A stretch of 64,000 nt of DNA from Octopus sinensis. Taxonomy: Eukaryota. The notes below the pieces were generated by a model that was not told the DNA's origin, did not search any database, and saw only the letters and a list, made by a program, of their open reading frames with translations. Positions 10,098 to 62,383 of the stretch are shown here, in pieces (positions within the stretch are counted from its first letter, which is position 1; every line of letters begins with the position of its first letter). The stretch is from assembly GCF_006345805.1 (NCBI RefSeq), contig NC_042997.1:144398001-144462000 (forward strand), given 5' to 3'. Both the position numbers and the translations under genes were made by a program.

Positions 10098-10189
10098 TAT
10101 TCCTTGGTGGTTCCTGTAATCCGACAACTTGGCGTTCTGATTGTGCTGTCCCATATTTAGAAAAACAAGGTATCAGCTATTTCAACCCG
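10098..10189 (+). CDS. raw: exon: (V)[30 protein letters not shown]
   Basis: tttccag acceptor, gtaggt donor, phase 1 to 0. Confidence 0.92.

Positions 10190-62383: not shown

What the first reader, a model, noticed from the sequence alone, without database searches (positions are those of the whole stretch)
10098..62383. Raw-like protein with two NDT-fold repeats: candidate active enzyme plus pseudo-enzyme
Seen: the two halves align motif by motif ([78 protein letters not shown]). Known: NDT/DNPH1-family N-glycosidases use a Glu nucleophile in an ExGYA-like helix (Lactobacillus NDT E98, human DNPH1 E104). Drosophila Raw and C. elegans OLRN-1 are known genetically as JNK/p38-linked regulators, and I recall no assigned enzymatic activity. 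Inference: repeat 1 keeps the Glu (LIEIAY) and could cleave a nucleotide or cofactor, while repeat 2 has Gln (MIQAAY) and could be a non-catalytic ligand sensor. This would be an unexplored nucleotide-signalling module in a cephalopod.
Basis: partly seen in the sequence, partly recalled or inferred. Interest (0 to 1): 0.72.

Follow-up and report, generated by a model that had tools for sequence, protein, structure and literature searches.

The report
Octopus Raw gene: cADPR hydrolase ortholog

Summary
On the + strand, 13 exons with canonical AG/GT splice sites (10098-62383) encode 432 aa. These are 100% identical to Octopus sinensis LOC115214842, a 552 aa protein whose first ~120 aa lie upstream of the window.

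The protein has two units, each a helical EF-hand-like domain followed by a Pfam PF15891 "NDT-like" domain. The two NDT-like domains are 25% identical (E 2e-12). Relatives are named "Raw" or "NDT-like domain-containing protein raw".

Chen et al. 2026 (PMC13455253) showed that Drosophila Raw and C. elegans OLRN-1 are cADPR-specific hydrolases. Catalysis needs two Glu in domain 1 (E396, E422) and Arg/Tyr in domain 2 (R949, Y953). Octopus keeps all eight signature residues with identical spacing.

Its domain 2 has N and Q where domain 1 has the two Glu. So "enzyme plus pseudo-enzyme" holds, but domain 2 completes the active site rather than acting as a separate sensor, and in fly Raw the isolated domains are inactive.

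By TM-score the closest solved structure is an NDT-like protein (4mcj, 0.72). TIR domains score 0.50-0.53, and no match reaches E 0.001.

One point goes beyond that paper's main text. Sponges, placozoans, a hemichordate and a leech keep a complete reciprocal second residue set, which cephalopods and arthropods have lost.

The parts
10098..10189 (+). Exon, start of NDT-like domain 1: (V)[30 protein letters not shown]. It holds F1 and C6, which correspond to fly F354 and C359.
   Evidence: tblastn to the Argonauta ortholog gives 94% identity.
18022..18075 (+). 54-nt exon [18 protein letters not shown]. Codon 18058-18060 (GAA) is E43, corresponding to fly catalytic E396.
   Evidence: Found by an AG/ORF/GT scan, confirmed by tblastn and codon mapping.
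26113..26191 (+). Exon [26 protein letters not shown](G). Codon 26173-26175 (GAA) is E69, corresponding to fly catalytic E422.
   Evidence: This column is E in 204 of 212 homologs.
29039..29096 (+). Exon (G)[18 protein letters not shown](S), the fourth strand of domain 1.
32173..32293 (+). Exon [27 protein letters not shown]...MLKQ, the end of domain 1. The counterparts of fly D946/R949/Y953/D956 read E/T/L/D here, so the reciprocal site is lost.
41119..41201 (+). Exon [27 protein letters not shown](Q), the linker and start of the second helical (EF-hand-like, 'DD2') domain.
44685..44745 (+). Exon (Q)[20 protein letters not shown], part of DD2.
50835..50966 (+). Exon ACDAFHY...[16 protein letters not shown], part of DD2. 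Homologs hit EF-hand Pfam models in this region.
53176..53275 (+). Exon [33 protein letters not shown](G), a moderately hydrophobic linker that is nearly identical in three cephalopods.
   Evidence: Model confidence is low here (pLDDT 49-67).
53788..53899 (+). Exon, start of NDT-like domain 2: ...[25 protein letters not shown](R). It has Y/Y where domain 1 has F/C.
58323..58467 (+). Exon (R)[48 protein letters not shown]. Codon 58387-58389 (AAC) is N in the E396 column. Codon 58465-58467 (CAG) is Q in the E422 column.
   Evidence: Both N and Q are also present in Argonauta and a third cephalopod.
61095..61184 (+). Exon [30 protein letters not shown], part of domain 2.
62210..62383 (+). Last exon [31 protein letters not shown]...KVTI plus the TAA stop. 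D383 (62231-33), R386 (62240-42), Y390 (62252-54) and D393 (62261-63) correspond to fly D946/R949/Y953/D956.
   Evidence: In 212 homologs these columns are D in 202, R in 203, Y in 203 and D in 179.

Best explanation
The window holds exons for residues 121-552 of the Octopus sinensis ortholog of Drosophila Raw / C. elegans OLRN-1. The protein is an internal duplication of one unit, a helical EF-hand-like domain followed by an NDT-like/TIR-like Rossmannoid domain.

Most likely the two nucleotide-fold domains pack against each other and build one composite pocket. Domain 1 supplies F121, C126 and the two catalytic glutamates E163 and E189 (P0151 numbering; E43 and E69 of the window protein). Domain 2 supplies D503, R506, Y510 and D513.

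The pocket binds cyclic ADP-ribose and hydrolyses its N1-glycosidic bond to give ADP-ribose. This ends the cADPR signal made by SARM1 and restrains Ask1/JNK-type stress-kinase signalling.

Domain 2 is catalytically dead as a glutamate donor (N439, Q465) but is an obligatory half of the active site.

- Shown here: the gene model, orthology, domain family, conservation and spacing of all eight residues, a confident compact fold, and loss of the reciprocal residue set.
- Inferred by orthology from published fly and worm biochemistry: the substrate, the chemistry, the pocket geometry and the pathway role.
For: **Gene and orthology**
- The gene model has canonical splice sites.
- It is 100% identical to O. 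sinensis LOC115214842 and 87% to the Argonauta protein. Homologs are named raw.

**Domain family**
- PF15891 scores 91.8 bits against a cut-off of 30, in two stretches.

**Signature residues**
- F/C/E/E sit at +5/+42/+68 in domain 1 and D/R/Y/D at +3/+7/+10 in domain 2. This is exactly the spacing of fly F354/C359/E396/E422 and D946/R949/Y953/D956 (PMC13455253).
- These columns are near-invariant in 212 two-unit homologs.

**Structure**
- The AlphaFold model of the whole protein has pLDDT 87.9 and pTM 0.88, which indicates a defined inter-domain arrangement.

**Published biochemistry (PMC13455253)**
- Recombinant Raw hydrolyses cADPR (Km about 20 nM) but not NAD.
- Both domains are required.
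- Substitution of E396 or E422, and the R949C and Y953N mutants, abolish activity.
- OLRN-1 has the same activity, and molluscs are in the paper's phylogeny.

**Covariation**
- Retention of both Glu in domain 2 goes with retention of Arg plus an aromatic residue in domain 1 (35/22/4/125, Fisher p 2e-18, not corrected for phylogeny). A composite inter-domain site predicts this pattern.
Against: - No octopus protein has been assayed.
- Identity to arthropod Raw is only about 30-35%, so substrate specificity could differ.
- I could not measure distances in the model, so the composite pocket in the octopus protein rests on the fly model and on covariation.
- Every Foldseek match is weaker than E 0.001, so fold assignment is by best TM-score, not by a significant hit.
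- The first ~120 residues, including the first EF-hand-like domain, are outside the window.
Confidence: 0.8

Rival explanations
1. Domain 1 is a DNPH1/NDT-type N-glycosidase acting on deoxynucleotides or nucleosides (dNMP, NMP) through a covalent Glu-ribosyl intermediate.
For: - Pfam places both domains in Nuc_deoxyri_tr2.
- The closest solved structures by TM-score are a putative NDT (4mcj, TMq 0.66-0.72) and true NDTs (6evs and 7o62, TMq 0.58-0.60).
- The Glu sits in the helix that follows the central strand (strand 53-57, helix 64-75, Glu 69), as recalled for NDTs.
- TIR, NDT and DNPH1 catalytic glutamates are treated as equivalent in PMC11204291.
Against: - The octopus protein has no hit to classical NDT (PF05014), and a leech homolog reaches only E 0.1.
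- PDB sequence and profile searches find no NDT or DNPH1.
- For fly Raw the substrate found was cADPR. The close analogues cGDPR and cIDPR, and NAD, were not cleaved (PMC13455253).
- The isolated domain 1 is inactive there, unlike the self-sufficient NDT/DNPH1 homo-oligomers.
Confidence: 0.07
2. Domain 2 is an autonomous, non-catalytic nucleotide sensor that regulates domain 1 allosterically.
For: - Domain 2 has lost both glutamates (N, Q) but keeps a folded NDT-like core: 25.3 bits to PF15891 and pLDDT mostly above 90.
- The degraded reciprocal pocket could still bind a ligand.
Against: - The residues of domain 2 that are invariant across animals are D/R/Y/D.
- In fly these lie at the interface with domain 1 and are required for catalysis (PMC13455253).
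- The domain-1 residues that would complete a second pocket are also lost in octopus (E/T/L/D). So little conserved surface is left for a separate ligand site.
Confidence: 0.08
3. The protein acts mainly as a non-enzymatic scaffold that restrains JNK/AP-1 signalling, which is the classical genetic view of Raw.
For: - The older genetics describe Raw and OLRN-1 only as pathway regulators (PMC2213652).
- EF-hand-like 'dimerisation' domains are present.
Against: - The two glutamates and the Arg/Tyr are invariant over hundreds of millions of years.
- In fly, loss of activity correlates with the mutant phenotype (PMC13455253).
Confidence: 0.05

Closest known systems
Drosophila melanogaster Raw (NP_723416.1), a cADPR-specific hydrolase (Chen et al. 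2026, PMC13455253)
   Same: - The four-domain order is the same (helical domain, nucleotide-fold domain, helical domain, nucleotide-fold domain).
- The eight signature residues are the same, with identical spacing.
- Domain 2 lacks the E422-type Glu in dipterans too (L in Bactrocera Raw).
   Different: - The octopus protein is about half as long (552 aa against about 1000 aa) because it lacks the fly's disordered inserts.
- Identity to arthropod Raw is about 30-35%.
- Octopus domain 2 has N and Q in the two Glu columns, where arthropods mostly have E and L/M.
- It has not been assayed.
C. elegans OLRN-1 ('Raw repeat' protein, PMC2213652; cADPR-degrading in PMC13455253)
   Same: - It has two Raw repeats, the first of which is essential.
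- It has a hydrophobic stretch between the repeats.
   Different: - OLRN-1 has a roughly 40-aa bipartite, strongly hydrophobic hairpin.
- The octopus linker is only moderately hydrophobic (best 19-aa Kyte-Doolittle mean 1.18) and is not predicted to span a membrane.
PDB 4mcj, putative nucleoside deoxyribosyltransferase BDI_0649 of Parabacteroides distasonis (a structural-genomics entry)
   Same: It is the best structural match of domain 1: TMq 0.66-0.72, rmsd 3.4-3.7 Å over about 140 columns.
   Different: - It is a single-domain bacterial protein with 15-17% identity and unknown function.
- The Foldseek E-value is only 2.6e-3.
Classical NDT (Lactobacillus, Glu98 nucleophile) and human DNPH1 (Glu104).
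   Same: - Flavodoxin-like fold.
- A glutamate in the helix after the central strand.
- N-glycosidic bond cleavage.
   Different: - No sequence-level match.
- Those enzymes are homo-oligomers of one domain and act on deoxynucleosides or deoxynucleotides.
- Raw uses two different domains of one chain and acts on cADPR.
SARM1 / plant / bacterial TIR-domain NADases and CD38
   Same: - Glutamate-dependent cleavage of a ribosyl-N bond in NAD-derived nucleotides.
- An active site formed between two domains.
- Fold resemblance: TMq 0.50-0.53 and TMt 0.44-0.56.
   Different: - No Pfam TIR hit.
- The structural match is poorer than to NDT-like proteins.
- Raw does not use NAD (PMC13455253).

Membership tests
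Raw/OLRN-1 family (animal cADPR hydrolases) | The unit of a helical EF-hand-like domain plus a nucleotide-fold domain is present twice in one chain. | tested here: met
   - Second helical domain and both nucleotide-fold domains are encoded in the window.
- The first helical domain is present in the 100%-identical full-length protein P0151.
- BLAST aligns the second half of the protein to the first half (E 1.4e-12).
- Homologs carry EF-hand Pfam hits.
Raw/OLRN-1 family (animal cADPR hydrolases) | Domain 1 carries F, C, E, E (fly 354/359/396/422). | tested here: met
   F121, C126, E163 and E189 of P0151 have the same +5/+42/+68 spacing.
Raw/OLRN-1 family (animal cADPR hydrolases) | Domain 2 carries D, R, Y, D (fly 946/949/953/956). 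| tested here: met
   D503, R506, Y510 and D513 have the same +3/+7/+10 spacing.
Raw/OLRN-1 family (animal cADPR hydrolases) | The closest named relatives are raw genes. | tested here: met
   Tribolium, Cloeon, Palaemon, Planococcus, Lycorma, Bactrocera and Haematobia proteins named 'raw' or 'Raw' are among the hits.
Raw/OLRN-1 family (animal cADPR hydrolases) | Hydrolyses cADPR to ADPR and does not hydrolyse NAD. | not testable with these tools
   This is a biochemical assay. It has been done for fly Raw and worm OLRN-1 only (PMC13455253).
Pfam PF15891 Nuc_deoxyri_tr2 (NDT-like) | Score at or above the gathering cut-off of 30 bits. | tested here: met
   - P0151 scores 91.8 bits in two stretches.
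- Domain 2 alone scores 25.3 bits, below the cut-off.
- The three in-window pieces of domain 1, joined, score 35.6 bits.
Classical nucleoside 2-deoxyribosyltransferase (PF05014) / DNPH1 | Sequence match to the family model or to solved members. | tested here: not met
   - The octopus protein has no PF05014 hit, and the leech homolog reaches only E 0.1, at 13.2 bits against a cut-off of 28.8.
- Profile and sequence searches of the PDB find no NDT or DNPH1.
Classical nucleoside 2-deoxyribosyltransferase (PF05014) / DNPH1 | The Glu superposes on the catalytic nucleophile (NDT E98 / DNPH1 E104). | not testable with these tools
   - Model coordinates and residue-level Foldseek alignments are not returned.
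- Only topology is available: strand 53-57, helix 64-75, Glu 69.
- Whole-domain TMq to true NDTs is 0.58-0.60.
TIR domain (Pfam TIR families; SARM1-type NADases) | Sequence match to a TIR model. | tested here: not met
   No TIR family appears in hmmscan of P0151, P0153 or P0176, even at E up to 10.
TIR domain (Pfam TIR families; SARM1-type NADases) | TIR fold. | tested here: inconclusive
   - With the full model, TIR domains are the best Foldseek hits by E-value (2.5e-3, TMt 0.44-0.56, rmsd 5-7 Å).
- With the domain-1 model they rank below the NDT-like 4mcj (TMq 0.50-0.53 against 0.72).
- No hit is better than E 0.001.

The most novel reading that the evidence does not exclude
The ancestral animal Raw may have had two reciprocal composite active sites related by pseudo-two-fold symmetry.
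- Site A is made of the domain-1 glutamates plus the domain-2 Arg/Tyr.
- Site B is made of the domain-2 glutamates plus the domain-1 Arg/Tyr.

Sponges, placozoans, a hemichordate and a leech still have both complete residue sets, and a nemertean and a sea star have one substitution each.

Site B then decayed at least three times (molluscs, with cephalopods the most degraded; the annelid Owenia; arthropods), always by matched losses on both domains, while site A was never lost.

The main text of the 2026 Raw paper does not mention symmetry, a second pocket or duplication. In octopus the vestigial site B could be a pure relic or a regulatory nucleotide site.
Probability: 0.4. Interest if true: 0.5.

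Novelty: new member of a known kind. Interest (0 to 1): 0.3.

Why it matters
This adds a cephalopod member to a newly characterised class of enzymes that remove the second messenger cADPR and act together with SARM1 in axon degeneration and JNK signalling. Cephalopods have large nervous systems with giant axons that are experimentally accessible. A compact 552-aa Raw without the fly's disordered inserts could be a convenient protein for structural work, or a tool to lower cADPR.

The comparative pattern, one universal site and one repeatedly lost reciprocal site, gives independent sequence-level support for the composite active-site model. It also suggests that basal-animal Raw proteins may have two active sites.

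This is a good calibration point rather than a discovery.

Tried and rejected
- **N-terminal exons.** I searched 1-10097 for the ~115 N-terminal residues by tblastn with the Argonauta ortholog. Nothing scored better than E 0.45, and the few hits were scattered on both strands. Those exons therefore lie upstream of the window.
- **PDB by sequence.** A profile of domain 1 and a full-length leech homolog were searched against all PDB sequences. Only chance-level GTPase and EF-hand hits came back, with no NDT, DNPH1 or TIR.
- **Defence and phage libraries.** PADLOC gave one weak hit (PDC-M11A, E 0.0046). PHROGs gave one unknown-function family for the leech homolog (E 2.5e-4). Neither was informative.
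- **Other features in the window.** There are no tRNAs and no Rfam families. Eight of the longer intronic ORFs, chosen outside microsatellite runs where possible, have no Pfam match. The very long 'ORFs' at 34.7-36.2 kb and 38.6-39.4 kb coincide with CT and TG microsatellites.
- **Transmembrane reading of the 53176-53275 exon.** Rejected, because the best 19-residue Kyte-Doolittle mean is 1.18.
- **Literature on TIR and NDT.** Two searches for a paper that aligns the TIR and NDT glutamates gave only an indirect statement (PMC11204291). One search was polluted because 'MilB' also matched the word 'Milbrandt'.
- **Residue-level superposition on NDT/DNPH1.** Not possible, because coordinates are not returned. 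I did not type NDT or DNPH1 sequences from memory, since an imperfect recollection would not be a test.

Full report
**1. Observation**

Ten lie within single exons. MIQAAYYIG is spliced across the intron between 58467 and 61095. The final Gly of LIEIAYSVG is a codon split between 26191 and 29039-29040.

Position 10098 is the first base after a ttccag acceptor, and 62383 is the last base of the TAA stop.

The window is AT-rich (34% GC) and full of microsatellites, as expected for an octopus genome.

**2. Gene model**

- A scan for AG-ORF-GT units between the known exons found a 54-nt exon at 18022-18075 ([18 protein letters not shown]).
- A second scan listed 29039-29096 among its candidates, and tblastn with the Argonauta ortholog picked it out.
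- tblastn with the closest full-length relative found four more exons between the two repeats.
- The resulting 13 exons all have AG/GT boundaries, join in frame and give 432 aa plus a stop.
- The roughly 115-120 N-terminal residues have no match in 1-10097, so the gene starts upstream of the window.
- The translated product is 100% identical over its whole length to 'uncharacterized protein LOC115214842 isoform X1 [Octopus sinensis]' (552 aa). It is 87% identical to the Argonauta hians protein.

**3. What the protein is**

- The two halves are genuinely related. The nucleotide-fold domains share 25% identity over 134 aa (E 2e-12).
- BLAST also aligns the second half of the protein (helical domain plus the start of domain 2) to the first half (E 1.4e-12). 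The whole protein is therefore a tandem duplication of one unit.
- Pfam assigns both nucleotide-fold domains to PF15891, Nuc_deoxyri_tr2. The full-length protein scores 91.8 bits against a cut-off of 30. Domain 2 alone scores 25.3 bits.
- No TIR model and no classical NDT model (PF05014) matches the octopus protein.
- An exhaustive HMMER search of 1.84 billion representatives found 962 relatives at E ≤ 0.001 and 64 at E ≤ 1e-30.
- Named relatives include 'Raw' (Bactrocera, Petrolisthes, Cherax), 'uncharacterized protein raw' (Tribolium, Cloeon, Palaemon, Planococcus) and 'NDT-like domain-containing protein raw' (Lycorma, Haematobia).
- So this is the octopus ortholog of raw. The NDT-like nature of the repeats is already part of public annotation.

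**4. What is known about the family**

The 'Raw repeats' were defined in 2007. At that time the first repeat of OLRN-1 was shown to be essential and the second largely dispensable for AWC asymmetry (PMC2213652).

In June 2026 Chen et al. (PMC13455253) reported the following.
- Drosophila Raw is a highly specific cADPR hydrolase (Km about 20 nM) that does not cleave NAD, cGDPR or cIDPR.
- It has two dimerisation domains and two domains that the authors call TIR.
- The conserved residues are F354, C359, E396 and E422 in the first domain, and D946, R949, Y953 and D956 in the second.
- Both domains are required, and each alone is inactive.
- Substitution of E396 or E422, and the R949C and Y953N mutants, abolish activity.
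- OLRN-1 degrades cADPR equally well.
- Raw co-occurs with SARM1 in invertebrates, including molluscs.

Its core inference, a Glu-dependent enzyme in repeat 1 with a non-catalytic repeat 2, matches what was found.

**5. Test of the E/Q columns**

I extracted both domains from 212 two-unit homologs and aligned them to one HMM.

| Domain | Column (fly numbering) | Count out of 212 |
|---|---|---|
| 1 | F354 | F 200 |
| 1 | C359 | C 195 |
| 1 | E396 | E 200 |
| 1 | E422 | E 204 |
| 2 | D946 | D 202 |
| 2 | R949 | R 203 |
| 2 | Y953 | Y 203 |
| 2 | D956 | D 179 |

Most of the remainder in each column are gaps.

- Octopus has all eight residues: F121, C126, E163, E189, D503, R506, Y510 and D513. 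Their spacing is exactly that of the fly residues.
- The reciprocal columns vary. The E422 column of domain 2 is E in 105, L in 45, Q in 24 and M in 16. The R949 column of domain 1 is R in only 76.
- Octopus reads FCEE|ETLD in domain 1 and YYNQ|DRYD in domain 2. Domain 1 has lost the Arg and Tyr that would partner them.
- The N and Q are shared by Argonauta and a third cephalopod, so they are not sequencing errors.

**6. A pattern beyond the paper's main text**

- Both complete sets (domain 1 FCEE + DR[YF]D, domain 2 FCEE + DRYD) are kept in a leech, a hemichordate, one Trichoplax protein and, except for the last Asp, in two sponges. The other Trichoplax protein differs only by a gap in the domain-1 E396 column.
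- A nemertean and a sea star differ at one position each.
- Gastropods and most bivalves have Q in the E396 column of domain 2 and I/V in the Tyr column of domain 1 (Mya differs: H or a gap, with K for the domain-1 Arg).
- Cephalopods, the annelid Owenia and arthropods are more degraded.
- Keeping both Glu in domain 2 is strongly associated with keeping Arg plus an aromatic residue in domain 1: 35/22/4/125, odds ratio about 50, Fisher p 2e-18. This is not corrected for shared ancestry.
- A head-to-tail pseudo-dimer with two reciprocal composite sites would predict this pattern. One site is universal, and the other has been lost repeatedly, at least three times on the accepted animal tree.
- The main text of the 2026 paper has no mention of symmetry, a second pocket, duplication, EF-hands or NDT.

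**7. Structure**

- AlphaFold2 with an 85-sequence alignment gives a confident model of the full protein: pLDDT 87.9 and pTM 0.88. This implies a defined packing of the four domains. Only the N-terminus and the linker before domain 2 are uncertain.
- Domain 1 alone has pLDDT 91.1. Its secondary-structure elements alternate between strands and helices. E69 lies in the helix (64-75) that follows the central strand (53-57), and E43 lies in the preceding helix.
- Foldseek against the PDB gives no match better than E 0.001.
- With the domain-1 model, the seven best hits are all chains of 4mcj, a 'putative nucleoside deoxyribosyltransferase' (TMq 0.66-0.72, rmsd about 3.5 Å).
- True NDTs reach TMq 0.58-0.60, and TIR domains reach 0.50-0.53.
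- With the full model, TIR domains lead by E-value (2.5e-3), but 4mcj again has the best TM-score and rmsd.
- So 'NDT-like fold' is at least as good a description as 'TIR fold'. The two are related Rossmann-like folds whose catalytic glutamates are treated as equivalent in the literature (PMC11204291).
- I could not superpose residues, because coordinates are not returned.

**8. Mechanism and rivals**

The best explanation (confidence 0.8) is orthologous function: a single composite pocket between domains 1 and 2 that hydrolyses cADPR to ADPR and so removes the SARM1-made signal.

- The sequence, conservation and fold steps are shown here.
- The substrate, chemistry and pathway are inferred from fly and worm.

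Three rivals are each given under 0.1, for the reasons listed in their entries:
- a DNPH1/NDT-type deoxynucleotide glycosidase;
- domain 2 as an autonomous sensor;
- a purely scaffolding role.

**9. Novelty**

The family, its activity, the catalytic glutamates and the requirement for the second domain are published. The octopus gene is already predicted in NCBI with the PF15891 domain. The locus is thus an uncharacterised new member of a known kind.

The residual interest lies in two things:
- the repeatedly lost reciprocal site;
- the compact cephalopod protein as an experimental object.

**10. Other checks**

Nothing else of note was found in the window. There are no tRNAs, no Rfam families and no Pfam domains in the intronic ORFs tested.

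Noticed in passing
window 53176-53275: This exon encodes [33 protein letters not shown]. The segment is almost identical in three cephalopods (34 of 35 residues against Argonauta, versus 87% for the whole protein). It is only moderately hydrophobic and is modelled with low confidence. It occupies the same inter-repeat position as the hydrophobic hairpin of C. elegans OLRN-1, so it might mediate membrane association.
   Followed up: partly
window 10098-62383 (exon boundaries): None of the intron positions or phases inside domain 1 (after residues 30 and 48, and within 75 and 94) coincides with those inside domain 2 (within 297, and after 345 and 375). The introns therefore give no trace of the internal duplication, which is consistent with the duplication being very old.
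   Followed up: no
window 254-2867: A 2.6-kb block of degenerate 21-33-bp tandem repeats (TATATATATAAACTGTATGTG-like, up to about 93 copies) sits at the 5' end of the window, inside the large upstream intron. GC here drops to 21%.
   Followed up: no
window 41769-42051: A 63-bp tandem repeat (4.4 copies, 82% matches) lies in the intron just after exon 41119-41201. The 145-aa ORF on the minus strand that overlaps it has no Pfam match.
   Followed up: partly
window 34776-36078 and 38702-39254: Long CT-rich (26-bp unit, about 50 copies) and TG-rich (14-18-bp unit) microsatellite arrays produce spurious ORFs of up to 514 aa in all frames.
   Followed up: yes
proteins P0002 (Cyanophora paradoxa, 749 aa, 6 matched stretches) and P0052 (Salpingoeca rosetta, 957 aa, named 'ECSIT N-terminal domain-containing'): Raw-type domains occur outside animals, in a glaucophyte alga and a choanoflagellate, with different architectures. 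The Cyanophora protein seems to carry more than two copies.
   Followed up: no
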